DNA of 64,000 nucleotides from Macrostomum lignano (taxonomy: Eukaryota), in NCBI GenBank assembly GCA_002269645.1, contig NIVC01000070.1, positions 310,001-374,000 of the forward strand. Reading direction: 5' to 3'. Both the position numbers and the translations under genes were made by a program. Each line of letters begins with the position of its first letter. Position 1 is the first letter of the stretch. The notes under the pieces were generated by a model. It did not search any database, had not been told where the DNA came from, and saw only the letters and a list, made by a program, of their open reading frames with translations. Of this stretch, positions 18,639 through 61,960 are shown one piece after another.

Positions 18639-39075
<20,437 letters not shown>

Positions 39076-40736: not shown

Positions 40737-43700
40737 ACTGTCTGTGTGTTTACGTGGACTTTTTGGAAGTTCAGTAGCCTCGTTAGCTGGACCAACCGGT
40801 GTAGGTAGACCACTTAGGTGGACCACCAAATAATTTTGTCTCTGGTGGGGTTAAGACGTTGATGAGGATCTCACATTAATGTCAGGCGGGTCAAGAAAGG
40901 CTTAAGCAATTTTGGGATGTCTAGCATGGTTTTTTCCAAAGTTATTCGCATTTCAGTTTAGCTGGACCTCCAGCCTGGTCTACCTAAACCGAGCGAGTCT
41001 GGTCCACGTAAACCGAAAAATTTTAGAAAATTTTTCGAAAATCGTCTGTTTGTGTCTGTTTGTGTCTGTTTGTGTCTGTTTGTGTCTGTTTGTGTATAGC
41101 AGTTATTAAGCATAGATTCAATGCAAAACTGAATTTTTTACAGATCATTACCTTACGAACAAATGGCTATGTTAACATCATATTATGACCGCCACTGGCT
41201 TTAAAACAATATGCGTTCAACATCTTTGACATTCAAGTAGGTACGCAGGTTAATTAAAAATTCTGAAACCTCGTATGCGAAATGAATTTGATACAGTAAA
41301 CTTTAAACTCCATTTAATTAGCTCAGTTCCAGCAATTCCGGTATCGTACTCTGAGCACAGACTCACAGAGTAAGACACCAACGTAAAGAAATCCAATTCG
41401 CGAACCAGATCAAACGATAAAGACTCCGAGACAAGAAAGATATTTAAGTGAAGCTTAAATAGTATTCTTCAATGACTTCTCAAGAACTCCCAGTGGTCCT
41501 TGATAGCCACACTGTGTAAATGCGAATTTCTGAGGCTCTACCATTACACAAGAAGAAAATAGCAACTTCATGAATTAAGTGCTTGCCAATTCTATCCTAA
41601 ACACTATGGGATATCCTGTTCTATCCTCCTCCAATTTTGGAAGAAGAAGATCCTAAGCTGCAGCCTTTCAAGTGCAAAGTTGAAGATGCAATTTACCTAA
41701 TTGAAAAGGACAATTCATCCATGTACATGCAAAAGATTTGATCGAGAGGACGCAATTAAGAAGGGCCTTTTAACTAGCGATCGGGTCCCTGACTCTCTAG
41801 CAAAAGGTCGACTTGATTGCGGTCCCAGTAAAACTAAGAACGCATTAACAGTCAGCCTAACACTCACTGTCTGTTTGGTCCACGTAAACACATGTGCAGG
41901 AGTATAGGGTTGGAACAGACAGACAGACAGACCTCCCTTTCTATAATTGGCTGGTTAACACTTAGGAGGATAGATCCACCCCAACAATGGGACCGACCGC
42001 AGCCAATAGGAAACCCGCAAGCGTTCTGAAGGTAAGACAGTGGAGAGAGGGATATATAATGTCTAAGCGGGTGGTCCACGTAAACCATGGCGTAGTGAGA
42101 CCAGACACATACAGTTTAAAAGAAAGTACTTATAATCCATACTATACAACTCTAAAGGATTGCAATTGTATAGATTAGAACGGTTTTTTATACTTAATAG
42201 GTCTAATGTTAATCCTTACTCCAAGTTTCATCCATATATAAATTTATTGTGCCAAAAACTGTAATCTACAACCAAAATATGATGACCCGCAAAAAAGGAC
42301 GCCAAGCCTAAAATAAAAACTAAAAAAACACCGTCGCAAAAAGCCACTGCGAAATCGAAGAAGCCGCATCGCCTGGTGAAAATCATCAGTCTGCTCGCAA
42401 ATCCGTCGACACCGAGTCCAGAAAAGTGAGTTTCGTTTGATGATCTCAAAGTAGCTAGCTGCAAGGCCTGCAACTCAATTGCTGTAGAGAAGCTGGTCCA
42501 CCTAACCTACAGACACAACTGAATCAGCTCTCTCAGTCTGTTTGAGGCTTTGGCTCTCAGAAGGTGGTCCACCTAACCTACAGACACAACTCGAACAGAT
42601 TTCTCTGTCTGTTTAAGGCTCTGGCTCTCAGAGCCGCCGAGAAAGTTTAGTGCCGAGAATGCTTCAGTTTGTTAGAATGCAATCAGAACAGATTCCTAGA
42701 AAGTGAGCTAGTCCAGCATCAAGGTAGAACATCTGGATGTGTAACGAGAGGCTCTTGGAGATTCCTGGCTCAGATTATCGCCTAGAAGTGCTTTGGAGTA
42801 GCTGGTCCACCTAACCTACAGACACAACTCGAACAGATTTCTCTGTCTGTTTGAGGCTCTGGCTCTTAGGTGGTCCACATAACCTACAGACACAACTGAA
42901 GCAGCTCTCTCAGTCTGTTTGAGGCTTTGGCTCTCAGAAGGTGGTCCACCTAACCTACAGACACAACTCGAACAGATTTCTCTGTCTGTTTAGGCTCTGG
43001 CTCTTAGAGCCGCCGAGAAAGTTTAGTGCAGAAAATGCTTCAGTTTGTTAGAATGCAATCAGAACAGATTCCTAGAAAGTGAGCTAGTCCAGCATCAAGG
43101 CAGAACATCTGGATGTGTAACGAAAGTCTCTCGGAGACTCCTGGCTCAGATTATCGCCTAGAAGTGCTGTGGAGTATCTGGTCCACCTAACCTACAGACA
43201 CAACTCGAACAGATTTCTGTCTGTTTGAGGCTCTGGCTCTCAGAGCCGCCGAGAAAGTTTAGTGCCGAGAATGCTTCAGTTTGTTAGAATGCAATCAGAA
43301 CAGATTCCTAGAAAGTGAGCTAGTCCAGCATCAAGGCAGAACATCTGGATGTGTAACGAGAGGCTCTCGGAGATTCCTGGCTCAGATTATCGCCTAGAAG
43401 TGCTTTGGAGTAGCTGGTCCACCTAACCTACAGACACAACTCGAACAGATTTCTGTCTGTTTGAGGCTCTGGATCTCAGAGCCGCCGAGAAAGTTTAGTG
43501 CCGAGAATGCTTCAGTTTGTTAGAATGCAATCAGAACAGATTCCTAGAAAGTGAGCTAGTCCAGCATCAAGGCAGAACATCTGGATGTGTAACGAGAGGC
43601 TCTCGGAGATTCCTGGCTCAGATTATCGCCTAGAAGTGCTTTGGAGTAGCTGGTCCACCTAACCTACAGACACAACTCGAACAGATTTCTCTGTCTGTTT

Positions 43701-46700
43701 GAGGCTCTGGCTCTCAGAGCCGCCGAGAAAGTTTAGTGCCGAGAATGCTTCAGTTTGTTAGAATGCAATCAGAACAGATTCCTAGAAAGTGAGCTAGTCC
43801 AGCATCAAGGTAGAACATGGATGTGTAACGAGAGGCTCTCGGAGATTCCTGGCTCAGATTATCGCCTAGAAGTGCTTTGGAGTAGCTGGTCCACCTAACC
43901 TACAGACACAACTCGAACAGATTTCTGTCTGTTTGAGGCTCTGGATCTCAGAGCCGCCGAGAAAGTTTAGTGCCGAGAATGCTTCAGTTTGTTAGAATGC
44001 AATCAGAACAGATTCCTAGAAAGTGAGCTAGTCCAGCATCAAGGTAGAACATCTGGATGTGTAACGAGAGGCTCTTGGAGATTCCTGGCTCAGATTATCG
44101 CCTAGAAGTGCTTTGGAGTAGCTGGTCCACCTAACCTACAGACACAACTCGAACAGATTTCTCTGTCTGTTTGAGGCTCTGGCTCTTAGGTGGTCCACAT
44201 AACCTACAGACACAACTGAAGCAGCTCTCTCAGTCTGTTTGAGGCTTTGGCTCTCAGAAGGTGGTCCACCTAACCTACAGACACAACTCGAACAGATTTC
44301 TCTGTCTGTTTAGGCTCTGGCTCTTAGAGCCGCCGAGAAAGTTTAGTGCAGAAAATGCTTCAGTTTGTTAGAATGCAATCAGAACAGATTTCTAGAAAGT
44401 GAGCTAGTCCAGCATCAAGGCAGAACATCTGGATGTGTAACGAGAGGCTCTCGGAGATTCCTGGCTCAGATTATCGCCTAGAAGTGCTTTGGAGTAGCTG
44501 GTCCACCTAACCTACAGACACAACTCGAACAGATTTCTGTCTGTTTGAGGCTCTGGATCTCAGAGCCGCCGAGAAAGTTTAGTGCCGAGAATGCTTCAGT
44601 TTGTTAGAATGCAATCAGAACAGATTCCTAGAAAGTGAGCTAGTCCAGCATCAAGGCAGAACATCTGGATGTGTAACGAGAGGCTCTCGGAGATTCCTGG
44701 CTCAGATTATCGCCTAGAAGTGCTTTGGAGTAGCTGGTCCACCTAACCTACAGACACAACTCGAACAGATTTCTCTGTCTGTTTGAGACTCTGGCTCTCA
44801 GAGCCGCCGAGAAAGTTTAGTGCCGAGAATGCTTCAGTTTGTTAGAATGCAATCAGAACAGATTCCTAGAAAGTGAGCTAGTCCAGCATCAAGGTAGAAC
44901 ATGGATGTGTAACGAGAGGCTCTTGGAGATTCCTGGCTCAGATTATCGCCTAGAAGTGCTGTAGAATAGCTGGTCCACCTAACCTACAGACACAACTCGA
45001 ACAGATTTGTCTGTCTGTTTGAGGCTCTGGCTCTCAGAGCCGCCGAGAAAGTTTAGTGCCGAGAATGCTTCAGTTTGTTAGAATGCAATCAGAACAGATT
45101 CCTAGAAAGTGAGCTAGTCCAGCATCAAGGCAGAACATCTGGATGTGTAACGAGAGGCTCTCGGAGATTCCTGGCTCAGATTATCGCCTAGAAGTGCTTT
45201 GGAGTAGCTGGTCCACCTAACCTACAGACACAACTCGAACAGATTTCTGTCTGTTTGAGGCTCTGGCTCTCAGAGCCGCCGAGAAAGTTTAGTGCCGAGA
45301 ATGCTTCAGTTTGTTAGAATGCAATCAGAACAGATTCCTAGAAAGTGAGCTAGTCCAGCATCAAGGCAGAACATCTGGATGTGTAACGAGAGGCTCTCGG
45401 AGATTCATGGCTTAGATTATCGCCTAGAAGTGCTTTGGAGTAGCTGGTCCACCTAACCTACAGACAACTCGAACAGATTTCTGTCTGTTTGAGGCTCTGG
45501 ATCTCAGAGCCGCCGAGAAAGTTTAGTGCCGAGAATGCTTCAGTTTGTTAGAATGCAATCAGAACAGATTCCTAGAAAGTGAGCTAGTCCAGCATCAAGG
45601 CAGAACATCTGGATGTGTAACGAGAGGCTCTCGGAGATTCCTGGCTCAGATTATCGCCTAGAAGTGCTTTGGAGTAGCTGGTCCACCTAACCTACAGACA
45701 CAACTCGAACAGATTTCTCTGTCTGTTTGAGGCTCTGGCTCTCAGAGCCGCCGAGAAAGTTTAGTGCCGAGAATGCTTCAGTTTGTTAGAATGCAATCAG
45801 AACAGATTCCTAGAAAGTGAGCTAGTCCAGCATCAAGGTAGAACATGGATGTGTAACGAGAGGCTCTTGGAGATTTCTGGCTCAGATTATCGCCTAGAAG
45901 TGCTTTGGAGTAGCTGGTCCACCTAACCTACAGACACAACTCGAACAGATTTCTCTGTCTGTTTGAGGCTCTGGCTCTTAGGTGGTCCACATAACCTACA
46001 GACACAACTGAAGCAGCTCTCTCAGTCTGTTTGAGGCTTTGGCTCTCAGAAGGTGGTCCACCTAACCTACAGACACAACTCGAACAGATTTCTCTGTCTG
46101 TTTGAGGCTCTGGCTCTTAGGTGGTCCACATAACCTATAGACACAACTGAAGCAGCTCTCTCAGTCTGTTTGAGCTTTGGCTCTCAGAAGGTGGTTCACC
46201 TCACCTACAGACACAACTCGAACAGATTTCTCTGTCTGTTTGAGGCTCTGGCTCTCAGGTGGTCCACATAACCTACAGACACAACTGGAACAGATTTCTG
46301 TGTCTGTTTGATTGTCAGTTAATTTTATTTTCTACCTTTGTAGGAGCCTGTGGTTGATTTTGTTCGCCTGAGCTCGACGAGACTGACTGCGTTTCACCGA
46401 GATGAAGGTTAAAACGAACTGTAAAAGAAGATTCAAACCACTAATTGACGAGAAATATAGAAAGGTTCATCATAGAGCTGAGCTGACGAAAGCGGATTCG
46501 ATGGCTGAGTAAGCTGAAATTCGTGAGAGAGGCAATGACAGATCAATAACAGAAGCGGTCCGGGACCACGGAGGCAGGGAAGGTCCAGGAGAATATTTCG
46601 TAGAAAAATAAGAAGATTAAGCCATCATCTGCGTGAACGAAAAGATGAAAGTCGGTAAAATGATTGGCTTATCATATGATTGCTCACCAACTCATTCAGT

Positions 46701-49025: not shown

Positions 49026-52000
49026 CTTCGTAGGAAGGGGGTTTTTGACTGTTGGGTTGGTGCGTGTGAAAACTGGGAGTGAAATTCCGGTGTAACATTA
49101 AGTGAGTGCTATATCGCAGGTGTGACATTGGGTGAGTGCTATATCAGGTGTGACATTAAGTGAGTGCTATATCAGGTGTGACATTGGGTGAGTGCTATAT
49201 CATGTGTGACATTAAGTGAGTGCTATATCAGGTGTGACATTGGGTGAGTGGTGTCAGGTGTGACAATGGTTGAGTACTATATCAGGTGTGACATTGGATG
49301 AGTGCTATATCAGGTGTGGCATTAAGTGAGTGCTATATCAGGTGTGACATTAAGTGAGTGCTATATCAGGTGTGACATTAAGTGAGAGCTATATCGCAGG
49401 TGTGACAGTGGGTGAGTGCTATATCAGGTGTGACATTAAGTGAGTGCTATATCGCAGGTGTGACAGTGGGTGAGTGCTATATCAGGTGTGACATTAAGTG
49501 AGTGCTATATCGCAGGTGTGACATTGGGTGAGTGCTATATCAGATGTGACATTAAGTGAGTGCTATATCAGGTGTGACATTGGGTGAGTGGTGTCAGGTG
49601 TGACAATGGTTGAGTGCTATATCAGGTGTGACATTGGATGAGTGCTATATCAGGTGTGGCATTAAGTGAGTGCTATATCAGGTGTGACATTAAGTGAGTG
49701 CTATATCAGGTGTGACATTAAGTGAGTGCTATATCGCAGGTGTGACATTGGGTGAGTGCTATATCAGGTGTGACATTAAGTGAGTGCTATATCAGGTGTG
49801 ACATTGGGTGAGTGCTATATCAGGTGTGGCATTAAGCGAGTGCTATATAAGGTGTGACATTGGGTGAGTGCTATATCAGGTGTGACATTGGGTGAGTGCT
49901 ATATCAGGTGTGACATTGGGTGAGTGCTATATCAGGTGTGACATTGGGTGAGTGCTATATCAGGTGTGGCATATGTGCGACGCGAGTTGTGAATAGGGTG
50001 TGAAATTAGGGTGCGCTTTCAATAGTGGCATTCAGTGTGACATTGTTTTGTGGCACGGATGCGAAAATTGCTGCTAGAAGTGACTATTTAAACTGCGTGC
50101 CCTAAGATACAACATTGAGTCTGACATAGGGTATTAGATCAAATATTAATTATCGATTAGATTATGAGATTAGCTGTGGGATCAGGTATGGGATTAGCTG
50201 TGGAATCAGGTATGAGATCAGGTATGGGATTAGATGTGGGATCAGTTGTGGGATTATGTGTGGGATTAGGTGTGGGATCAGGTATGGGATTAGCTGTGGG
50301 ATCAGGTGTGGGATTATGTGTGGAAATAGGTGTGGGATTAGGTGTGGGATTAGGTGTGGGATCAGGTATGGGATTAGGTGTGGAATCAGGTATGGAATCA
50401 CGTGTGAGATCAAGTAGGAGATGAGGTATGGGATTACGTGTGGGATCAGGTGTGGGATCAGGTGTGAGATAAGGTATGGGATTAGGTGTGGGATCAGGTG
50501 TGGAATTAGGTGTGGGATCAGGTATGGGATTAGGTGTGGAATCAGGTATGAGATCAGGTATGGGATTAGGTGTGGGATCAGGTGTGGGATTAGGTGTGGG
50601 ATCAGGTGTGGGATTAGGTGTGGGATTATTTGTGGGATTAGGTGTGGGATTAGGTGTGGGATCAGGTATGGGATTAGGTGTGGGATTAGGTGTGGGATCA
50701 GGTATGGGATTAGGTGTGGAATCAGGTATGAGATCAGGTATGGGATTAGGTGTGGGATTAGGTGTGGGATTAGGTGTGGGATTATGTGTGGGATTATGTG
50801 TGGGATTAGGAGTCGGATCAGGTATGGGATTAGGTGTGGGATTAGGTGTGGGATTAGATGTGGGATTATGTGTGGGATTAGAAGTGGGATTAGGTGTGGT
50901 ATCAGGTGTCGGATTAGGTGTGGGATTATGTGTGGGATTAGGAGTGGGATTAGGTGTGGGATTAGGTGTGGGATTAGGTGTGGGATTAGGAGTGGGATTA
51001 GGTATGGGATTATGTGTGGGATTATGTGTGGGATTAGGAGTGGGATTAGGTGAGGGATCAGGTGTGGGATTAGGTGTGGGAATATTTGTGGGATTAGGAG
51101 TGGGATAAGGTGTGGGATTAGGTGTGGGATTAGGTGTGGGATTAGGCATGGGATTAGGTGTGGGATTAGGAGTGGGATTAGGTGTGGGATCAGGTGTGGG
51201 ATTATGTGTGGGATTAGGTGTGGGATTAGGTGTGGGATTATGTGTGGGATTATGTGTGGGATTAGGAGTGGGATCAGGTATGGGATTAGGTGTGGGATTA
51301 GGTGTGGGATTATGTGTGGGATTAGAAGTGGGATTAGGTGTGGTATCAGGTGTGGGATTAGGTGTGGGATTATGTGTGGGATTAGGAGTGGGATTAGGTG
51401 TGGGATTAGGTGTGGGATTAGGTGTGGGATTAGGAGTGGGATTAGGTATGGGATTATGTGTGGGATTAGGAGTGGGATTAGGTGTGGGATCAGGTGTGGG
51501 ATTAGGTGTGGGATTATTTGTGGGATTAGGAGTGGGATTAGGTGTGGGATTAGGTGTGGGATTAGGTGTGGGATTAGGCATGGGATTAGGTGTGGGATTA
51601 GGAGTGGGATTAGGTGTGGGATCAGGTGTGGGATTATGTGTGGGATTAGGTGTGGGATTAGGTGTGGGATTAGGTGTGGGATTATGTGTGGGATTAGGAG
51701 TGGGATTAGGTATGGGATTAGGTGTGGGATTAGGTGTGGGATTAGGCATGGGATTAGGTGTGGGATTAGGAGTGGGATTAGGTGTGGGATTATGTGTGGG
51801 ATTAGGTGTGGGATTAGGTGTGGGATTAGGTGTGGGATTAGGTGTGGGATTATGTGTGGGATTAGGAGTGGGATTAGGTATCGGATTATGTGTGGGATTA
51901 GGAGTGGGATTAGGTATGGGATTAGGTGTGGGATTAGGAGCGGGATTAGGTGTGGGATCAGGTGTGGGATTAGGTGTGGGATTAGGTGTGGATTAGGTGT

Positions 52001-55000
52001 GGGATTAGGAGTTGGATTACGTGTAGGATTAGGTGTGGGATCAGGTGTGGGATTAGGTGTGGGATTAGGTGTGGGATTAGGTGTGGGATTAGGTGTGGGA
52101 TTATGTGTGGGATAAGGAGTGGGATTACGTGTAGGATTAGGTGTGGGATTAGGTGTGGGATCAGGTAAGGGATGAGGTGCCCAGTTAGTTGCAGGATTTG
52201 TGGCACACCTGAAACGCGTGCTTGGACGCAGCGTAGGCGGACCTGTACGGCTGGCTGACGAGGCCCTGCAGGCTGCTGATTCCGACCACAGTCAGACCGC
52301 AACCCGCCTCGATGGCTTTGCGGCACAAGGCCGTTGTCAAGGCAACGTGGCCGAAGTAGTTAACCTGGCGAGTTGGATTCAGTGGATTTTATAGATTTGA
52401 TTTTGAAAGGCGGTAAAGTAGATCAGGCATGCGGTAGAGTAGATCAGGCATGCGGTAGAGTAGACCAGGCATGCGGTAGAGTAGATCAGGCATGCGGTAG
52501 AGTAGATCAGGCATGCGGTAGAGTAGATCAAGCATGCGGTAGAGTAGAACAGGCATGCGGTAGAGTAGATCAGGCATGCGGTAGAGTAGATCAAGCATGC
52601 GGTAGAGTAGATCAGGCATGCGGTAGAGTAGATCAGGCATGCGGTAGAGTACATCAAGCATGCGGTAGAGTAGAACAGGCATGCGGTAGAGTAGATCAGG
52701 CATGCGGTAGACTAGATCAAGCATGCGGTAGAGTAGATTAGGCATGTGGTAGAGTAGATCAGGCATGCGGTAGAGTAGATCAGGCATGCGGTAGAGTAGA
52801 TAAAGAATGCGGTAGAGTAGATCAGGCATGCGGTAGAGTAGATCAGGCATGCGGTAGAGTAGATCAGGCATGCGGTACAGTAGATCAAGCATGCGGTAGA
52901 GTAGATCAAGCATGCGGTAGAGTAGATCAGGCATGCGGTAGAGTAGATCAGGCATGCGGTAGAGTAGATCAAGCATGCGGTAGAGTAGATCAGGCATGCG
53001 GTACAGTAGATCAAGCATGCGGTAGAGTAGATCAGGCATGCGGTAGAGTAGATCAGGCATGCGGTACAGTAGATCAAGCATGCGGTAGAGTAGATCAAGC
53101 ATGCGGTAGAGTAGATCAGGCATGCGGTAGAGTAGATCAGGCATGCGGTAGAGTAGATCAGGCATGCGGTAGAGTAGATCAGGCATGCGGTAGAGTAGAT
53201 CAGGCATGCGGTAGAGTAGATCAGGCATGCGGTAGAGTAGATCAGGCATGCGGTAGAGTAGATCAGGCATGCGGTAGAGTAGATCAGGCATGCGGTAGAG
53301 TAGATCAAGCATGCGGTAGAGTAGATCAGGCATGCGGTAGAGTAGATCAGGCATGCGGTAGAGTAGATCAGGCATGCGGTAGAGTAGATCAGGCATGCGG
53401 TAGAGTAGATCAAGCATGCGGTAGAGTAGATCAGGCATGCGGTAGAGTAGATCAGGCATGCGGTAGAGTAGATCAGGCATGCGGTAGAGTAGATCAGGCA
53501 TGCGGTAGAGTAGATCAGGCATGCGGTACAGTAGATCAAGCATGCGGTAGAGTAGATCAGGCATGCGGTAGAGTAGATCAGGCATGCGGTAGAGTAGATC
53601 AGGCATGCGGTAGAGTAGATCAAGCATGCGGTAGAGTAGATCAGGCATGCGGTAGAGTAGATCAGGCATGCGGTAGAGTAGATCAGGCATGCGGTAGAGT
53701 AGATCAGGCATGCGGTAGAGTAGATCAGGCATGCGGTAGAGTAGATCAAGCATGCGGTAGAGTAGATCAGGCATGCGGTAGAGTAGATCAGGCATGCGGT
53801 AGAGTAGATCAGGCATGCGGTAGACTAGATCAAGCATGCGGTAGAGTAGATTAGGCATGTGGTAGAGTAGATCAGGCATGCGGTAGAGTAGATCAGGCAT
53901 GCGGTAGAGTAGATAAAGAATGCGGTAGAGTAGATCAGGCATGCGGTAGACTAGATCAGGCATGCGGTAGAGTAGATCAGGCATGCGGTACAGTAGATCA
54001 AGCATGCGGTAGAGTAGATCAGGCATGCGGTAGAGTAGATCAGGCATGCGGTAGAGTAGATCAGGCATGCGGTAGAGTAGATAAAGAATGCGGTAGAGTA
54101 GATCAGGCATGCGGTAGACTAGATCAGGCATGCGGTAGAGTAGATCAGGCATGCGGTAGAGTAGATCAGGCATGCGGTAGAGTAGATCAGGCATGCGGTA
54201 GAGTAGATCAGGCATGCGGTAGAGTAGATCAGGCATGCGGTAGAGTAGATCAAGCATGCGGTAGAGTAGATCAGGCATGCGGTACAGTAGATCAAGCATG
54301 CGGTAGAGTAGATCAGGCATGCGGTAGAGTAGATCAGGCATGCGGTAGAGTAGATCAGGCATGCGGTAGAGTAGATCAGGCATGCGGTAGAGTAGATCAG
54401 GCATGCGGTAGAGTAGATCAGGCATGCGGTACAGTAGATCAAGCATGCGGTAGAGTAGATCAAGCATGCGGTACAGTAGATCAAGCATGCGGTAGAGTAG
54501 ATCAGGTATGCGGTAGAGTAGATCAGGCATGCGGTACAGTAGATCAAGCATGCGGTAGAGTAGATCAGGCATGCGGTAGAGTAGATCAGGCATGCGGTAC
54601 AGTAGATCAAGCATGCGGTAGAGTAGATCAGGCATGCGGTACAGTAGATCAAGCATGCGGTAGAGTAGATCAGGCATGCGGTAGAGTAGATCAGGCATGC
54701 GGTAGAGTAGATCAGGCATGCGGTAGAGTAGATCAGGCATGCGGTAGAGTAGATCAAGCATGCGGTAGAGTAGATCAAGCATGCGGTAGAGTAGATCAGG
54801 CATGCGGTAGAGTAGATCAGGCATGCGGTAGAGTAGATCAAGCATGCGGTAGAGTAGATCAGGCATGCGGTAGAGTAGATCAGGCATGCGGTAGAGTAGA
54901 TCAGGCATGCGGTAGAGTAGATCAAGCATGCGGTAGAGTAGATCAAGCATGCGGTAGAGTAGATCAGGCATGCGGTAGAGTAGATCAGGCATGCGGTAGA

Positions 55001-56532
55001 GTAGATCAGGCATGCGGTAGAGTAGATCAAGCATGCGGTAGAGTAGATCAGGCATGCGGTAGAGTAGATCAGGCATGCGGTACAGTAGATCAAGCATGCG
55101 GTAGAGTAGATCAGGCATGCGGTACAGTAGATCAAGCATGCGGTAGAGTAGATCAGGCATGCGGTAGAGTAGAGCAAGCATGCGGTAGAGTAGATCAGGC
55201 ATGCGGTACAGTAGATCAAGCATGCGGTAGAGTAGATCAAGCATGCGGTAGAGTAGATCAGGCATGCGGTAGAGTAGATCAGGCATGCGGTAGAGTAGAT
55301 CAGGCATGCGGTAGAGTAGATCAGGCATGCGGTAGAGTAGATCAAGCATGCGGTAGAGTAGATCAGGCATGCGGTAGAGTAGATCAGGCATGCGGTAGAG
55401 TAGATCAGGCATGCGGTAGAGTAGATCAGGCATGCGGTAGAGTAGATCAGGCATGCGGTAGAGTAGATCAGGCATGCGGTAGAGTAGATCAGGCATGCGG
55501 TAGAGTAGATCAGGCATGCGGTAGAGTAGATCAGGCATGCGGTAGAGTAGATCAGGCATGCGGTAGAGTAGATCAGGCATGCGGTAGAGTAGATCAGGCA
55601 TGCGGTAGAGTAGATCAGGCATGCGGTAGAGTAGATCAGGCATGCGGTAGAGTAGATCAGGCATGCGGTAGAGTAGATCAGGCATGCGGTAGAGTAGATA
55701 AAGAATGCGGTAGAGTAGATCAGGCATGCGGTAGAGTAGATCAGGCATGCGGTAGAGTAGATCAGGCATGCGGTAGAGTAGATCAGGCATGCGGTAGAGT
55801 AGATCAGGCATGCGGTAGAGTAGATCAGGCATGCGGTAGAGTAGATCAGGCATGCGGTAGAGTAGATCAGGCATGCAGTAGAGTAGATCAGGCATGCGGT
55901 AGAGTAGATCAGGCTTGCGGTAGAGTAGATCAGGCATGCGGTAGAGTAGATCAGGCATGCGGTAGAGTAGATAAAGAATGCGGTATAGTAGATCAGGCAT
56001 GCGGTAGAGTAGATCAGGCATGCGGTAGAGTAGATCAGGCATGCGGTAGAGTAGATCAGGCATGCGGTAGAGTAGAACTCACCTGCATCAGTCGCCTATG
56101 TACATCCATCTCGGTTTCCACGATCTCACCCCGGTAGCTCTGCCCAGCATTGTTGATCAGCAGGTCCAACCGGCCGCCAGCCGCAGCCCACACCCGGCTG
56201 GCCGCATCGCCAGAAAGTTCGCCGTCTGACGCGGCCAAGTCGAGCTGAACCACTGCGTGCCTGGCCGGTTCCGACAGTCGCTGCTGAGTAGCTTTCAGCT
56301 TGTCGACGTCACGACCGGCTAGAAGCAGGCGAGCTCCTTGGCGAGCGAAAGCCGCGGCCAAGGCTTCGCCCAGGCCCGAGGAGGCGCCCGTGACAAGCAC
56401 AGTTTTGCCCGACAGGATTCTCCTCAAGCCGGAACCGCGACGCCGGCGACTGGCGAGCCAGACGAGACCGACCGCGGCGGCGGCGGCTGGCCCAAGCAGC
56501 CAGCGAAGCAGCCACCAAGGCAAAGTTGCCAT
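48684..56532 (-). CDS. DHRS7B: Short-chain dehydrogenase/reductase family member 7B-like, 3 exons (56532-56083, 52364-52209, 49025-48684), 315 aa
   Basis: N-terminal hydrophobic anchor; TGASSGLG; [13 protein letters not shown]; [10 protein letters not shown]; ISSLQG; catalytic YAASK in [23 protein letters not shown]; [14 protein letters not shown]. All introns are phase 0 GT-AG. Confidence 0.92.
49096..49972. repeat. 28-30-bp minisatellite GTGAGTGCTATATCAGGTGTGACATTAA (about 31 copies), DHRS7B intron 2
   Basis: Seen directly. Confidence 0.97.
50160..52170. repeat. 12-bp minisatellite GGTGTGGGATTA (about 165 copies), DHRS7B intron 2
   Basis: Seen directly. Confidence 0.98.
52209..52364 (-). 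CDS. DHRS7B: DHRS7B-like exon 2 (catalytic YxxxK)
   Basis: [52 protein letters not shown]; CAG/GTGTGC borders. Confidence 0.93.
52412..56076. repeat. 21-bp minisatellite GTAGAGTAGATCAGGCATGCG (about 174 copies) filling DHRS7B intron 1
   Basis: Seen directly; highly homogeneous. Confidence 0.99.
56083..56532 (-). CDS. DHRS7B: DHRS7B-like exon 1 (membrane anchor plus Rossmann fold)
   Basis: MATLPWWLL...[17 protein letters not shown]...[28 protein letters not shown]; donor GTGAGT. Confidence 0.93.
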
Positions 56533-57054
56533 CGTTGCCGTTATTTTTAACTGGAATATTGTACACGTAGTTAATTGGTGAGTTAGTTGGCTATTTCCGT
56601 TTAGGCGCTGCCGAAAATAAAAAAGGCTCACAGCGGCCCGGACTGACTCATCAGCAGGCAGGCACTTTGGGAAAAACAAAATCCCGAGTTTTGACAATCC
56701 CGGGATTCTCGGGATCGGGATTTCCCGGACTTTGCGAATCCCGGGATTGAAAAAAGTTTCTAATCTTTGTGCAATTTTGGTTGTTGACAACGTTGTTTGT
56801 TGACAAGTTGACAAAAGTAGAGCAGAATAAAATATTTTGGTATCAAGAAGCTGACAGTGAGCTCTGATTGGAGTCTGATGTACGGGCTGGCGCAATAGAC
56901 GTGCTTCTTTACATGCCAGTATCAGCTCAGGAAAATCACACTTGTGATTTAACCTTGGGAATGATAGCTTAAATCAGAGCTATAGCCCGAGATACTGAGT
57001 GATACCTGGGTAGAAGGGGATCAGACGTCACCCTCCCAGGGGCACCCGCCCTAG

Positions 57055-58820: not shown

Positions 58821-61800
58821 TCATTCACGCCAGTAGTAGGCAGGGTTGACTCGGCTAACATTAAAACTGTCTTGGAAGACATTTCCGTTGCTGCTGCTGC
58901 TGCCACCAGCCCTCGCGTCAATGTCGTCTCCATATCGACCGCGTCGATCGTGATGGATTCGCTGGTAGCTGTGGTAGGGACTCGAGCGATCTGCTGGAGC
59001 GTCACCTGCTGTCCCGCGAGCATTGTCGGAATCCAGCTGTCGAAGTGCGGCGGCAACCATGGCGTCTCGTTGACGTCGCCCACTACTGCGACGACGCGGC
59101 ATGATTTCCTCGACGGGAATGGCGTCGTCCATCGATTCTGAAATTTTAGAACTCAGTTTAGTTACAGGTAAGAAAACATATAGACATCTCTACGCATAAG
59201 TTCTTCAATCGCAAGCTCACCATTTGAACCAGTTTGATTGATATTATCAGTCGACTGGAAGTGTCGCTTGTGCGCAACACTTTGTCTACTATCAGTAGTT
59301 GAATAAGGATGTTGATCTTGATCATCATAATTTTCTCCGGAGTCTGTTTCTGCTTGGTATTTGCTCGGGCTTGAATCAACAGCATCATAAGCCGCTTGAG
59401 ATGCAGGCACTTTGTGGACAACAGTCCACTCCTCGAATTTCGGTGCATTCTCACTCGCGTCCGATTCGTAGCTACTCTGTCGACGATAAGAAGTCCCGCT
59501 TGGCGCTTCGAGCTGCGGCGGCACAGAATGATACTCGGTCCACTCTTCAAAGCGCGGCGTCTCTTCGTCGGAAGAAGCCGCCTCAGTTTTTGAAATGTAT
59601 CGCGAACGACGAGTTGGGGGAGCTGATTTCTCTTCACGCCTCTGCCTGCCGTTGCTATCATCGTTGGTGATTCGTACTCTGTTCCTTGTCGTCCTGTCAT
59701 TTGATCGGCTTCTGTTACTGTCAGGCTTTGGTTCGCTTTCTTCCAGCAGCCGTCGATAGCCAACAACCGAGTCCTCCTGATTGGGACTGCCGTGCACTTC
59801 AGACTGATTCATGGGCGCCTGTTCAGATGGAACCGACTCAAACAATCCCCAGTCATCACGTGAGAAGAAGTCATTATGGTCTCCGAATTGACCATTGTTT
59901 TGTCGCCAACGATTGAACCGGTCCTCTCTTGTGCTCCACTGAGTTTCATTATCGCGCCTTCTTTCATCTTCCAGTTGACGTCGACTTTGCTCTTGCTCGC
60001 GGCGACGCCTATCTTCCGCTTCCTGGCGTCTCTGCTCCTCCTCAATTTCTCTGCGTCGTCTTTCTTCAGCTTCTCGACGAGCTCTCGCTCTGGCTTCGTC
60101 TTCTTCACGCCGACCTGCGTCGTCTTGAGGTTTATAGCTATTGGCCTGGTTGGAAGCATCGTTAGCGTCATTATCGAGGAATCGACGGTAACCGATTGCA
60201 GATCCAGAATCGAAAGGCTCAGAATCCGCCAGTGCGGTCCATTCGTTTACGCCTTCCTTGAATCTCTGCCTGTCAGTCTGTGGGCTTTTGGTTTCATTTT
60301 GACGACTTTTGTGTTCTTCCGGACCTAGAGTTTGCAGGCGGTCAGCCTCGCGACTGCGCTGGGTGCGTTCCTTTAGTTTCTGCTGACGCTGCTTCTCCTC
60401 GATCTCTCGCAGGTTGCGCATGTACTCGCTCTCGATGCTGGCATCAGACTCACCGGAGTTTTCGTTTCCGCTAGGTTTTTGCAGGCTACGATAACTACGC
60501 GTTGACTTTGAGTAGCGCGAGTCAGATGGTGACGCTTCAGCGCTTTGCATACTTGCTTGCGCTGTAGGAGCGGTTTCATAGACGGTCCACTCTTCAGTAG
60601 TGTACAAATCTGGATTGCTCTCTTGAGCCTTCGCTCTTTCTCTTCTTCGAGCTTCTTCCTCTCTTCTTTGTAGCTCCTCTTCCCTTCTTTGTAACTCTTC
60701 TTCCCTTCTGCGAGATTCTTCTTCCTTTCGCCGCCTGTCTTGTTCCTCTTGCTCCGCCTGGCGTCGCCGTTCCATGCGTTGGCGCTGCTCCTCCTCTTCC
60801 TGCTGCTGTGCAAGGCGGCGCTTCTCACGCGCCTCGCGAAGCCGACGCTCATTTTCCTGCCTGGCAACTTCGCGCTCCTCTTCCTCCAGCCTGCGTCTCT
60901 CCTGCTCCTCCTGCTCTCTGCGACGCCGCCTGTCTTCTTCGGCCTTCCAGCGTCTCTCTTCTTCTTCTTCAAGCTCTCTTCTGCCCCGCTGTTCTTCAGC
61001 AAATTGTTTTTCTTGCCTACGCAAGTCTTGAGCTTGCAGTTCTTCGCGGTGCTTTCTATCGTACTCATTCTTGCGTCGCTCAGCCTCTTCCATTCGTTGC
61101 TTTTCCAATGCTTCCAGCCGTTTCCACTCTTCCTCGTCTTTCTTCTTTGTTTGGGCTTCACGTTTGGTACCATTGCTATCCGCTGCATTTTTTCGATTTG
61201 TTCCAAACGGCAACGTTTCATAAACTGTCCACCGACCGACTTTGACAGAGTTTGGTGCTTCGCCACTATTTTGTCTCTTGTACATGTCTGCTTTTTCATC
61301 CGCGCGAAGCGTTCTCGGTACATACTTGGACTTGTTGATGACAATAGTTGGTTGGCTTGGGGCACTGGCCGGAGCAGACTCGCTCGCACGGACTTCGGTT
61401 GAGCTAACATATAAATCCGAGTCCGACTTGCCAAAGCTTTTTAACGGCTTCAATTGAGCAGCAGCAGACTTTGGCCACGGCGTTCGATGCGGAGCGTAGG
61501 ACGACTTCGTGGATGAATCTCCCGTATTAACCGGCTGAGAATGCGATACAGATGACACTTGACTTGCAGTAACGTCTCTTTCCTGCGGCACTATCGGAAT
61601 ACGCGGCGTCTTTGATCCAGTAGTTGAGCGGTTACTCGGCCTGCGACTAACACCTGACTGACGACCGCGACTAGCTGATGGCCGTCTGGAGACGGAAGCT
61701 GCAGACTGTTGCGGACCGAACAGGCTAGCAATGTTATTGACGTGACCCTTCTTGATGCCGGCTTCGCTCTCGATGAGAGCAGCCGAGCTTGCTTGGCTTC

Positions 61801-61960
61801 GTTGCGTCACATTTACCGGCCTCTGGGGGCTTTGGTTTCTTGACGAGCTGACAACATCCGGATAGCTCATTTTCTCATAGACAAGATGTTGTATTCGGAC
61901 TTCTAAAAAACGAAGAGTGTCAATGGAAAGAATGGAAAACTGGGCGTGATAGATTGGCAT
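58821..61960 (-). CDS. Uncharacterized ~1018-aa E/R-rich protein, 2 exons (61960-59221, 59137-58821)
   Basis: 932-codon non-repeat ORF. An 83-nt phase-1 intron (G|GTGAGC...AAATTTCAG|AA) joins it in frame to the MDDAIPVEEIMPRRR...YYWRE* ORF. Start is ATG 61960 (after an acceptor) or 61870. Confidence 0.8.

What the first reader, a model, noticed from the sequence alone, without database searches (positions are those of the whole stretch)
58821..61960. Orphan ~1018-aa protein alternating E/R single-alpha-helix-like rods with a six-copy acidic-Trp motif
Seen: E/R-rich tracts (about 60620-61140, 60340-60420, 59990-60130) alternate with related motifs: GRWTVYETLP, TEEWTVYETAP, VNEWTALADSEP, RDDWGLFESVP, FEEWTEYHSVP, FEEWTVVHKVP. 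The last members are often followed by GYRR/SYRR. Established: ER/K tracts form stable single alpha-helices that act as spacers, and acidic-flanked Trp motifs are short docking sites (LIR/AIM W-x-x-L/V, AP-2-binding WxxF, kinesin-light-chain W-acidic). EEWTVV and EWTAL fit LIR; DDWGLF fits WxxF. Inference: a multivalent ruler/scaffold that spaces repeated binding sites. I recognise no family.
Basis: partly seen in the sequence, partly recalled or inferred. Interest (0 to 1): 0.7.

Follow-up and report, generated by a model that had tools for sequence, protein, structure and literature searches.

The report
Flatworm rod-and-Trp-motif scaffold protein
This is a real, spliced gene of the flatworm Macrostomum lignano that encodes a mostly unfolded protein in which long charged helices separate six copies of a conserved tryptophan motif; it has one distant paralogue in the same species, no detectable relative elsewhere, and no known function.

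Summary
A two-exon gene on the minus strand (exon 1 61870/61960-59221, 83-nt intron, exon 2 59137-58821) encodes a 988/1018-aa protein carrying all six quoted Trp motifs and three E/R tracts. An independent Macrostomum lignano gene model (UniRef A0A1I8J1Y6) equals its last 202 residues across my predicted splice, which fixes the organism and the intron.

AlphaFold2 gives three uninterrupted helices of 180, 39 and 76 residues; everything else, motifs included, is low-confidence coil. The helices are charge-neutral and lack a hydrophobic seam, so they look like single alpha-helices, not coiled coils.

A 709-aa M. lignano paralogue has the same plan. The motifs, an N-terminal box, GYRR boxes and a C-terminal box are conserved (about 70-78% for the boxes, against 17-27% for linkers), with many synonymous codon differences.

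An exhaustive profile search of 1.84 billion proteins found only M. lignano sequences. Pfam, PDB and the literature gave nothing.

The multivalent-scaffold reading is plausible. The LIR, WxxF and KLC assignments do not fit the family consensus ([TN]P[DE][IL][FY]xx[ED]E-W-T-V-Y-E-T-x-P). Rod length varies between copies, which argues against a strict ruler. The partner and function are unknown. Interest is moderate to low.

The parts
59221..61870 (-). Coding exon 1, from the probable start Met (MSYPDVV...). An upstream in-frame ATG at 61960 would add 30 residues.
   Evidence: ORF, sequence. The paralogue P0001 aligns from the second Met.
59138..59220 (-). 83-nt intron (GTGAGC...TTTCAG), phase 1.
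   Evidence: The junction ...QTGSN|ESMDDAIPVEE... is reproduced exactly in the independent M. lignano model P0003.
58821..59137 (-). Coding exon 2, including the TGA stop.
   Evidence: P0003 is identical to the last 202 residues.
61718..61765 (-). N-terminal box EAGIKKGHVNNIASLF (aa 66-81 in 1018 numbering).
   Evidence: 13 of 16 residues are identical to P0001, 4 of them with different codons. It is the highest-identity block, at 78%.
61208..61252 (-). Trp motif 1, NSVKVGRWTVYETLP.
60629..61168 (-). Rod 1: a 180-residue E/R(K) helix (aa 265-444), about 27 nm if fully helical.
   Evidence: AF2 helix 235-414 in 988 numbering, pLDDT 82-94. Composition: 57 E, 49 R, 13 K; net charge 0; 9% strong hydrophobics. 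The coding DNA holds 21-nt tandem repeats at 60638-60760.
60566..60616 (-). Trp motif 2, NPDLYTTEEWTVYETAP (closest to the consensus).
   Evidence: Top score of 24.5 with the paralogue-derived matrix.
60329..60445 (-). Rod 2: a 39-residue charged helix (aa 506-544).
   Evidence: AF2 helix 476-514, pLDDT 82-88. It is less E/R-rich than the others, with 18% hydrophobics.
60215..60268 (-). Trp motif 3, QRFKEGVNEWTALADSEP (divergent copy).
   Evidence: Not recovered by the paralogue matrix.
60173..60202 (-). GYRR box a, SAIGYRRFLD.
59894..60121 (-). Rod 3: a 76-residue E/R helix (aa 614-689), about 11 nm.
   Evidence: AF2 helix 584-659, pLDDT 87-91. Composition: 25 R, 0 K, 18 E; net charge +1.
59828..59875 (-). 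Trp motif 4, NDFFSRDDWGLFESVP.
59741..59773 (-). GYRR box b, DSVVGYRRLLE.
   Evidence: 8-9 of 11 residues are identical to the two P0001 boxes, with 3-4 synonymous codon differences.
59519..59563 (-). Trp motif 5, ETPRFEEWTEYHSVP, followed by SYRR at 59477-59497.
59405..59449 (-). Trp motif 6, NAPKFEEWTVVHKVP.
58842..58883 (-). C-terminal box NVFQDSFNVSRVNP, possibly a degenerate seventh motif copy.
   Evidence: 10 of 14 residues are identical to P0001, 8 of them with different codons. MAFFT repeatedly aligned the paralogue's box onto the Trp motif.

Best explanation
This is a genuine protein-coding gene of Macrostomum lignano. It belongs to a small family that, so far, appears restricted to that lineage, with two divergent paralogues.

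The product is an extended, mostly disordered scaffold. It has a basic Ser/Pro-rich N-terminal region carrying a conserved 16-residue box. Three charge-neutral E/R helices follow, and they most likely behave as stable single alpha-helices of about 27, 6 and 11 nm. Between and after them lie six copies of a 15-17-residue linear motif ([TN]P[DE][IL][FY]xx[ED]E-W-T-V-Y-E-T-x-P), several followed by a GYRR[LF]L[DE] box. The protein ends in an acidic tail with a conserved box.

The most likely mechanism is that the motifs are repeated docking peptides, rich in strand-forming residues. They would engage several copies of one partner (an oligomer, a polymer such as a cytoskeletal filament, or a multi-domain protein), while the helices keep the sites apart and extended.

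Shown here: the gene structure, the repeats, their conservation under purifying selection, and the predicted helices and disorder. Inferred: that the motifs bind a partner, and that the rods act as spacers. The partner is unknown.
For: - Gene model and organism. P0003 is an exact match across the splice.
- Same architecture in paralogue P0001 (N-box, five Trp motifs, E/R rods, GYRR boxes, C-box).
- Purifying selection on the blocks: 71 of 98 block residues are identical, and 37 of those use different codons.
- Identity by class: N-box 0.78, GYRR 0.73, C-box 0.69, 17-residue motif windows 0.45, linkers 0.27 of aligned residues and 0.17 overall.
- Motif significance, cross-validated from the paralogue.
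- AF2: uninterrupted helices with pLDDT 82-94, and motifs in coil with pLDDT <50, in both paralogues.
- Rod composition fits the single-alpha-helix type: neutral, many i/i+4 opposite-charge pairs, a/d occupancy <=0.38. [quoted passage not shown]
- W-to-W spacing of the later motifs is similar in the two paralogues: 130/103/38 versus 130/97/48 residues.
Against: - No binding partner, expression pattern or localisation is known.
- The only comparison is with a paralogue; there is no orthologue.
- AF2 used an alignment of 1-2 sequences. It cannot tell a single alpha-helix from a coiled coil, and it could miss a fold formed by the motifs.
- Rod 1 length is not conserved: 180 versus 113 residues, and P0001 and P0005 differ by two 19-residue units. 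Exact spacing there is therefore not constrained.
- Rod 2 is only moderately charged.
Confidence: 0.45

Rival explanations
1. Filament-binding repeat protein. Each Trp motif (perhaps together with the N-terminal box) binds one subunit of F-actin or a microtubule protofilament, as Xin or nebulin repeats or MAP repeats do. The protein would then lie along the polymer, or cross-link it.
For: - Repeated short motifs sit on an elongated molecule.
- The N-terminal region is strongly basic, net +17.
- From memory only: the Xin repeat consensus GDV(K/Q/R)(T/S/G)x(R/K/T)WLFETxPLD resembles W-T-V-Y-E-T-x-P with one extra residue. The N-box KKGHVNNIASLF has the KG.V.....LF spacing of that consensus.
Against: - Pfam (which holds a Xin model) gave no hit at E<=1 for the whole protein or at E<=10 for motif fragments.
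- The register differs by one residue.
- Motif spacing is irregular (214, 116, 130, 103 and 38 residues) and does not match a polymer repeat.
- No homologue with a known cytoskeletal role was found.
Confidence: 0.15
2. One reading: the motifs are LIR/AIM (ATG8), WxxF (AP-2 alpha appendage) or W-acidic (kinesin light chain) docking sites.
For: - Acidic residues precede W in most copies.
- EEWTVV and NEWTAL fit an acidic-[WFY]xx[LIV] core.
- WTVYE and WGLFE fit a relaxed W..[FWY][DE] pattern in 3 of 6 window copies and 3 of 5 paralogue copies.
Against: - The strict WxxF-acidic pattern W..[FW].[DE] matches 0 of 11 copies.
- The KLC W-acidic pattern matches 0 of 11. The reference peptide is TNLEWDDSAI, with acids after W (PMC6214655), whereas here W is followed by T-V.
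- A LIR in the W register matches 2 of 6 window copies and 0 of 5 paralogue copies. The conserved +3 residue is Tyr, not L/I/V.
- The conserved upstream aromatic, T at +1 and P at +7 are not explained by any of these classes.
Confidence: 0.08
3. The motifs are self-association or structural elements. The strand-prone W-T-V-Y-E-T segments would pair with each other within or between molecules (a beta-sheet bead or higher-order assembly), and the charged helices could pair as antiparallel or dimeric rods, giving a structural polymer rather than a docking scaffold.
For: - The motif core is made of strong strand formers (W, T, V, Y, T) with an upstream aromatic that could form a hairpin.
- The C-terminal box looks like a degenerate copy.
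- The opposite net charges of the N-terminal (+17) and C-terminal (-16) halves could favour head-to-tail association.
Against: - AF2 predicts no strands and no contacts between motifs in either paralogue, though with very shallow alignments.
- The rods lack a hydrophobic seam.
Confidence: 0.15
4. A nuclear or RNA-associated protein. The E/R helices and the Arg/Ser-rich N-terminal region (RRPS, SRRPSNRS) would bind RNA or chromatin, with the Trp motifs recruiting a partner, as GW/W-motif proteins do.
For: - The N-terminus is basic and Ser/Arg-rich, and the helices are Arg-dominated (25 R and 0 K in rod 3).
- Single alpha-helices can provide protein-RNA contact surfaces (PMC5812594 abstract).
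Against: No RNA-binding or chromatin domain was found. The rods are net neutral. There are no localisation data.
Confidence: 0.1
5. A non-functional or spurious ORF, arising from low-complexity or repeat sequence in a very repeat-rich genome.
For: The window is full of satellites and microsatellites that create long spurious ORFs. The rod-coding DNA contains 21-nt tandem repeats.
Against: - The ORF is 2.8 kb, with a canonical in-frame intron that an independent model reproduces.
- The blocks are conserved at the amino-acid level with 37 synonymous codon differences against a paralogue.
- The sequence outside the rods is non-repetitive.
Confidence: 0.03

Closest known systems
ER/K-type stable single alpha-helix (SAH) domains (myosin VI/X, caldesmon, INCENP, drebrin, MAP7-type linkers)
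   Same: Long stretches of E with R/K, many i/i+3 and i/i+4 opposite-charge pairs, neutral net charge and no hydrophobic heptad seam. They are predicted as uninterrupted helices of 76-180 residues, and they sit between functional elements as connectors (PMC5812594, PMC4183817).
   Different: Arg dominates over Lys (49 R to 13 K in rod 1; 25 R to 0 K in rod 3). The helices connect short linear motifs in disordered segments rather than folded domains. There is no motor, kinase or other known domain in the protein.
Multivalent short-linear-motif scaffolds (FAM21 LFa repeats, Eps15/epsin DPF/DPW, GW182 GW repeats, LC8-binding TQT arrays) - named from general knowledge
   Same: Several copies of one short conserved motif sit in an otherwise poorly conserved, disordered chain. 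Motifs are conserved and linkers are not.
   Different: The motif is longer (15-17 residues) and matches none of those classes. It is interspersed with rigid helices rather than flexible linkers. No partner is known.
Xin actin-binding repeat (Pfam Xin family; consensus recalled from memory)
   Same: A W-hydrophobic-aromatic-E-T-x-P core. The N-terminal box has a KG.V.....LF spacing similar to the first half of the Xin consensus.
   Different: One extra residue lies between W and E-T. No Pfam hit was found, even at E<=10 on fragments. There are 6 copies with irregular spacing rather than tens of tandem 16-mers.
Trichohyalin and TPH-type E/R-rich helical proteins; the automatic names 'CCDC66 domain-containing' and 'DUF3824 domain-containing' carried by the UniRef entries
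   Same: Very E/R-rich helical segments. The UniRef names of P0005/P0006 and P0003 point to such families.
   Different: Current Pfam gives no hit at all for the window protein, P0001, P0003 or P0005 at E<=10. I could not reproduce the domain matches those names imply, and no Pfam domain is conserved.

Membership tests
ER/K single alpha-helix (SAH) segment | Long segment dominated by E and R/K, with dense i/i+3 and i/i+4 opposite-charge pairs and no helix breakers | tested here: met
   Rod 1: 57 E, 49 R, 13 K in 180 residues, with 36+32 i/i+4 pairs. Rod 3: 18 E, 25 R in 76 residues. AF2 gives continuous helices with pLDDT 82-94. Rod 2 meets this only weakly.
ER/K single alpha-helix (SAH) segment | No hydrophobic a/d seam, which distinguishes it from a coiled coil | tested here: met
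   Strong hydrophobics are 7-18%. The best a/d occupancy in any 28-residue window is <=0.38.
ER/K single alpha-helix (SAH) segment | Monomeric, stable helix in solution | not testable with these tools
   Needs CD, AUC or SAXS on the recombinant rod.
LIR/AIM (ATG8-interacting motif) | Core [W/F/Y]-x-x-[L/I/V] preceded by acidic residues, conserved across the copies | tested here: not met
   In the W register it fits 2 of 6 window copies (EWTAL, EEWTVV) and 0 of 5 paralogue copies. The consensus +3 residue is Tyr. The regex was recalled from memory.
WxxF-acidic AP-2 alpha-appendage motif | W-x-x-[F/W]-x-[D/E] | tested here: not met
   0 of 11 copies match. Only the relaxed W..[FWY][DE] fits, in 6 of 11 copies. 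The pattern was recalled from memory.
Kinesin light chain W-acidic motif | Trp flanked by acidic residues on both sides (for example TNLEWDDSAI) | tested here: not met
   0 of 11 copies match. W is followed by T/G then V/L/A/E. The reference peptide is from PMC6214655.
Xin repeat | Match to the Pfam Xin repeat model, with tandem 16-residue repeats | tested here: not met
   No Pfam family at E<=1 for the whole protein, and none at E<=10 for 13 motif fragments. HMMER filters limit what can be seen above E of about 0.1.
CCDC66 / DUF3824 (names on the UniRef entries) | Match to the corresponding Pfam model | tested here: not met
   0 families for P0003, P0001 and P0005 at E<=10, and for the window protein at E<=1.
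New M. lignano 'EEWTVYETxP' family (window gene plus Mlig023050) | N-box EAGIKKGHVxxxASLF, at least 5 Trp motifs, E/R rods, GYRR boxes and C-box NVFxxxFNVSRxNP, in that order | tested here: met
   Both proteins carry all the elements in collinear order. The profile of the blocks scores P0001 at 164 bits, E 9e-44, against 1.84e9 proteins.

The most novel reading that the evidence does not exclude
The 15-17-residue motif [TN]P[DE][IL][FY]xx[ED]EWTVYETxP (with the GYRR and terminal boxes) is a previously undescribed binding module. The family would then be a flatworm-specific molecular tether or cross-linker: its single-alpha-helix rods hold multiple copies of one cellular partner (for example a cytoskeletal polymer in the epidermis, muscle, adhesive organ or sperm) tens of nanometres apart. 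That would be a new filament- or complex-binding repeat, analogous to but unrelated to Xin or nebulin repeats.
Probability: 0.2. Interest if true: 0.5.

Novelty: new variant of a known kind. Interest (0 to 1): 0.3.

Why it matters
If the motifs are docking sites, the protein would be a natural example of rigid single alpha-helix spacers presenting an array of identical short motifs. Protein engineers build that design deliberately, and it is rarely documented in nature. The motif itself would be a new interaction module.

It would also add to the catalogue of genes restricted to flatworms, in a regeneration and bioadhesion model where RNAi and in situ hybridisation are routine. The question is therefore testable.

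As it stands it is an uncharacterised, taxonomically restricted gene with no functional data, so its wider significance is limited.

Tried and rejected
1. Full-length search in the 5.8-billion-protein index. E/R words saturated the 8000 candidates; only P0001 and an unrelated E/R-rich fungal protein passed.

2. The E/R-deleted query and the block alignment A3 returned nothing, not even P0001. Yet the A3 profile scores P0001 at 188 bits locally. I treat these two results as failures of word-index retrieval, not as evidence of absence.

4. Several alignment designs for the exhaustive search were rejected by the tool or misaligned by MAFFT. I solved this by testing inputs locally and then using A7.

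5. The exhaustive search found only M. lignano proteins.

6. Pfam on the whole protein, the fragments and the paralogue models gave nothing. The Xin, CCDC66 and DUF3824 leads were dropped.

7. PDB profile and sequence searches gave nothing.

8. Metagenome scans for relatives found nothing. The scan for the invariant EAGIKKGHV box gave a single hit that was chance, with stop codons all around it.

9. Literature searches for the motif strings, the gene id and Macrostomum plus SAH returned no papers.

10. The large neighbouring 'ORFs' at 50157-56063 are translated satellites, not genes.

11. Synteny with the paralogue locus L001 was uninformative; its only neighbour is a RhoGEF/WD40 gene.
Full report
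**What is there**

The minus strand carries a 932-aa ORF at 59162-61960. Reading the DNA shows a canonical donor (AAATG|GTGAGC, last exon base 59221) and acceptor (TTTCAG|AATCG, first exon base 59137). These join it in frame to a 103-aa ORF that ends at the TGA at 58821. The spliced product is 1018 aa from the first ATG.

GYRR follows motifs 3 and 4, and SYRR follows motif 5.

**Organism and gene model**

An exhaustive profile search (below) returned P0003, a 202-aa Macrostomum lignano UniRef entry (A0A1I8J1Y6). It is identical to the last 202 residues of my spliced model, including the exon junction ...QTGSN|ESMDDAIPVEE.... P0004 is a near-identical second M. lignano copy of the same C-terminus.

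The window is therefore M. lignano (a free-living flatworm), and an independent prediction confirms the intron. The rest of the window is typical of that repeat-rich genome, with many satellites and microsatellites.

**A paralogue with the same plan**

The only meaningful hit of the first database search was P0001, a 709-aa M. lignano hypothetical protein (BOX15_Mlig023050g2). Because the window is M. lignano too, P0001 is a paralogue, not an orthologue.

It is collinear with the window protein:
- an N-terminal box: EAGIKKGHVSSLASLF versus EAGIKKGHVNNIASLF in the window;
- five Trp motifs: EQWTVYETLP, EEWTVYDTVP, EEWTVYERIP, EEWTVYHSAA and EEWTVTRQIP;
- E/R rods between the first three motifs;
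- DSV(I)GYRR(Y/L)LD boxes;
- a C-terminal box: NVFHQQFNVSRENP versus NVFQDSFNVSRVNP in the window.

The paralogue aligns from the window's second Met (MSYPDVV, 61870), so the real protein is probably 988 aa.

The family consensus, from 11 copies, is [TN]P[DE][IL][FY]xx[ED]E-W-T-V-Y-E-T-x-P.

**Is it more than chance, and is it constrained?**

- A weight matrix built only from the five P0001 motifs ranks window motifs 2, 5, 1, 6 and 4 as the five best of about 970 positions. In 2000 shuffles of the protein the maximum averaged -4.8 (sd 3.5), against observed scores of 24.5, 16.0, 12.5, 9.3 and -1.2. Motif 3 is a divergent copy that this matrix does not recover.
- In eight conserved blocks, 71 of 98 residues are identical between the paralogues, and 37 of those 71 use different codons. 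This indicates conservation at the protein level after synonymous sites have diverged.
- By class, identity is 0.78 for the N-box, 0.73 for the GYRR boxes, 0.69 for the C-box and 0.45 for 17-residue motif windows. Other linkers reach 0.27 of aligned residues, or 0.17 of all residues.

The motifs pass it, but only against a paralogue.

**Structure**

AlphaFold2 on the 988-aa protein (alignment of two sequences) gives three uninterrupted helices:
- residues 235-414 (180 aa, pLDDT 82-94);
- residues 476-514 (39 aa, pLDDT 82-88);
- residues 584-659 (76 aa, pLDDT 87-91).

There is also a weak helix at 904-922. Everything else has pLDDT below 50, including every Trp motif.

P0001 alone gives the same picture, with helices at 214-326 and 363-449. 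The second of these starts at the GYRR box.

The rods are charge-neutral (net 0, +1 and +1). Strong hydrophobics make up 7-18%, and the best a/d heptad occupancy is no more than 0.38. Rods 1 and 3 also have dense i/i+4 opposite-charge pairs. That is the signature of ER/K single alpha-helices rather than coiled coils (PMC5812594, PMC5347031, PMC4183817). At 0.15 nm per residue the rods would span about 27, 6 and 11 nm.

The N-terminal disordered region has net charge +17, and the motif 4-6 region has net charge -16.

**Relatives and families**

- Pfam: no family for the whole protein at E<=1, for 13 motif or box fragments at E<=10, or for P0001, P0003 and P0005 at E<=10. The UniRef names 'DUF3824 domain-containing' and 'CCDC66 domain-containing' are therefore not reproduced; I suspect, but did not test, that they reflect low-complexity matches.
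- PDB: nothing by profile or by sequence.
- Exhaustive search: I built a 106-position profile of the four kinds of conserved block (A7) and had HMMER read all 1.84 billion cluster representatives. Only three proteins reached E<=1e-3, and all are M. lignano: P0001 (164 bits), P0003 and P0004.
- Metagenomes: two scans found nothing real.
- Literature: the motif strings and the gene id return no paper.

Within the reach of these tools the family is restricted to M. lignano. The caveat is that other macrostomid proteomes are probably not in the libraries, and a short-block profile has limited reach.

**How it most likely works**

Shown here: an elongated molecule in which conserved short motifs, lying in disordered segments, are separated by long charged helices.

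Inferred: the motifs are docking peptides for several copies of one partner, and the helices keep them extended and apart. The motif core W-T-V-Y-E-T is made of strand-forming residues, so binding by strand addition is a reasonable guess.

I put about 0.45 on this multivalent-scaffold reading. The partner is unknown.

A strict ruler is unlikely for rod 1, for three reasons. It is 180 residues here and 113 in P0001. P0001 and P0005, two models in the same 90% cluster, differ by two 19-residue ERERRRREDSERRRLAEAE units. The rod-coding DNA contains 21-nt tandem repeats. In contrast, the spacing of the later motifs is similar in the two paralogues: 130/103/38 versus 130/97/48 residues.

I tested these with patterns recalled from memory:
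- W..[FW].[DE] matches 0 of 11 copies.
- The KLC W-acidic pattern matches 0 of 11. The reference peptide is TNLEWDDSAI (PMC6214655), whereas here W is followed by T-V.
- An acidic-[WFY]xx[LIV] core in the W register matches 2 of 6 window copies and 0 of 5 paralogue copies, because the conserved +3 residue is Tyr.
- A relaxed W..[FWY][DE] fits 6 of 11 copies.

None of these classes explains the conserved upstream aromatic, the T at +1 or the P at +7.

A resemblance to the Xin actin-binding repeat is a lead from memory only. It failed the one test available, the Pfam scan.

**Verdict**

The general idea (single-alpha-helix spacers plus repeated linear motifs) is supported in silico. The named partner classes are not. 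The family is undescribed and taxonomically restricted.

It is a new variant of a known design rather than a new kind of system, and nothing yet links it to a biological process. Interest is 0.3.

Noticed in passing
window 52410-56076 and 50168-52179: Two very large tandem arrays: a 21-bp unit x175 (GCGGTAGAGTAGATCAGGCAT) and a 12-bp unit x168 (GATTAGGTGTGG). They create spurious ORFs of 1224 and 530 aa (MPDLLYR... and PNPT... repeats) and a GC skew of up to 0.86.
   Followed up: partly
window 8876-10442, 11175-12923, 27553-30682, 35751-36585, 37869-38484, 42488-46311, 49089-49972: Further mini- and microsatellites: (TCTG)x438, a 21-bp unit x75, 20-24-bp units, and a 236-bp satellite of more than 12 copies. 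These explain most long 'ORFs' and composition swings in the window. The finding's gene is one of the few real genes here.
   Followed up: partly
window 56056-56895 (-): An exon encoding the N-terminal half of a short-chain dehydrogenase/reductase (Pfam adh_short, E 8.5e-17) lies immediately downstream of the finding's gene on the same strand. The rest of that gene was not modelled.
   Followed up: no
window 58842-58883 (-), and P0001 residues 681-694: The conserved C-terminal box NVFxxxFNVSRxNP aligns onto the Trp motif (F at -4/-5, W replaced by F, V at +2, P at +7). It may be a degenerate seventh copy.
   Followed up: partly
P0001 versus P0005 (paralogue locus L001, 3081-6135): Two gene models of the paralogue differ by two 19-residue ERERRRREDSERRRLAEAE units in rod 1. 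The cause could be copy-number variation between homeologous copies or assembly collapse. Either way the rod length is labile.
   Followed up: no
window 61871-61960 (-): The start codon is ambiguous. An upstream in-frame ATG adds 30 residues (MPIYHAQFSILSIDTLRFLEVRIQHLVYEK) with no counterpart in the paralogue. A TTTTAG at about 61903 could be a trans-splice acceptor, as is common in M. lignano; this was not tested.
   Followed up: no
P0004 (UniRef A0A1I8IYG5): A second M. lignano copy of the gene's C-terminus differs at four residues over about 120. Its upstream part is mis-framed: it matches the alternative-frame ORF at 59158-59766. This fits the duplicated genome of this species.
   Followed up: no
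window 59028-59114 (-): A short, weakly predicted helix (VEEIMPRRRSSGRRQRDAMVAAALRQLDS, pLDDT about 50-58) sits in exon 2 and has an RRRSS basic patch. Only RRSS is shared with the paralogue.
   Followed up: no
tool behaviour: The word-indexed protein search returned no hit for block alignment A3, although the same profile scores P0001 at 188 bits locally. Negative results from that tool on short-motif queries should not be read as absence.
   Followed up: yes
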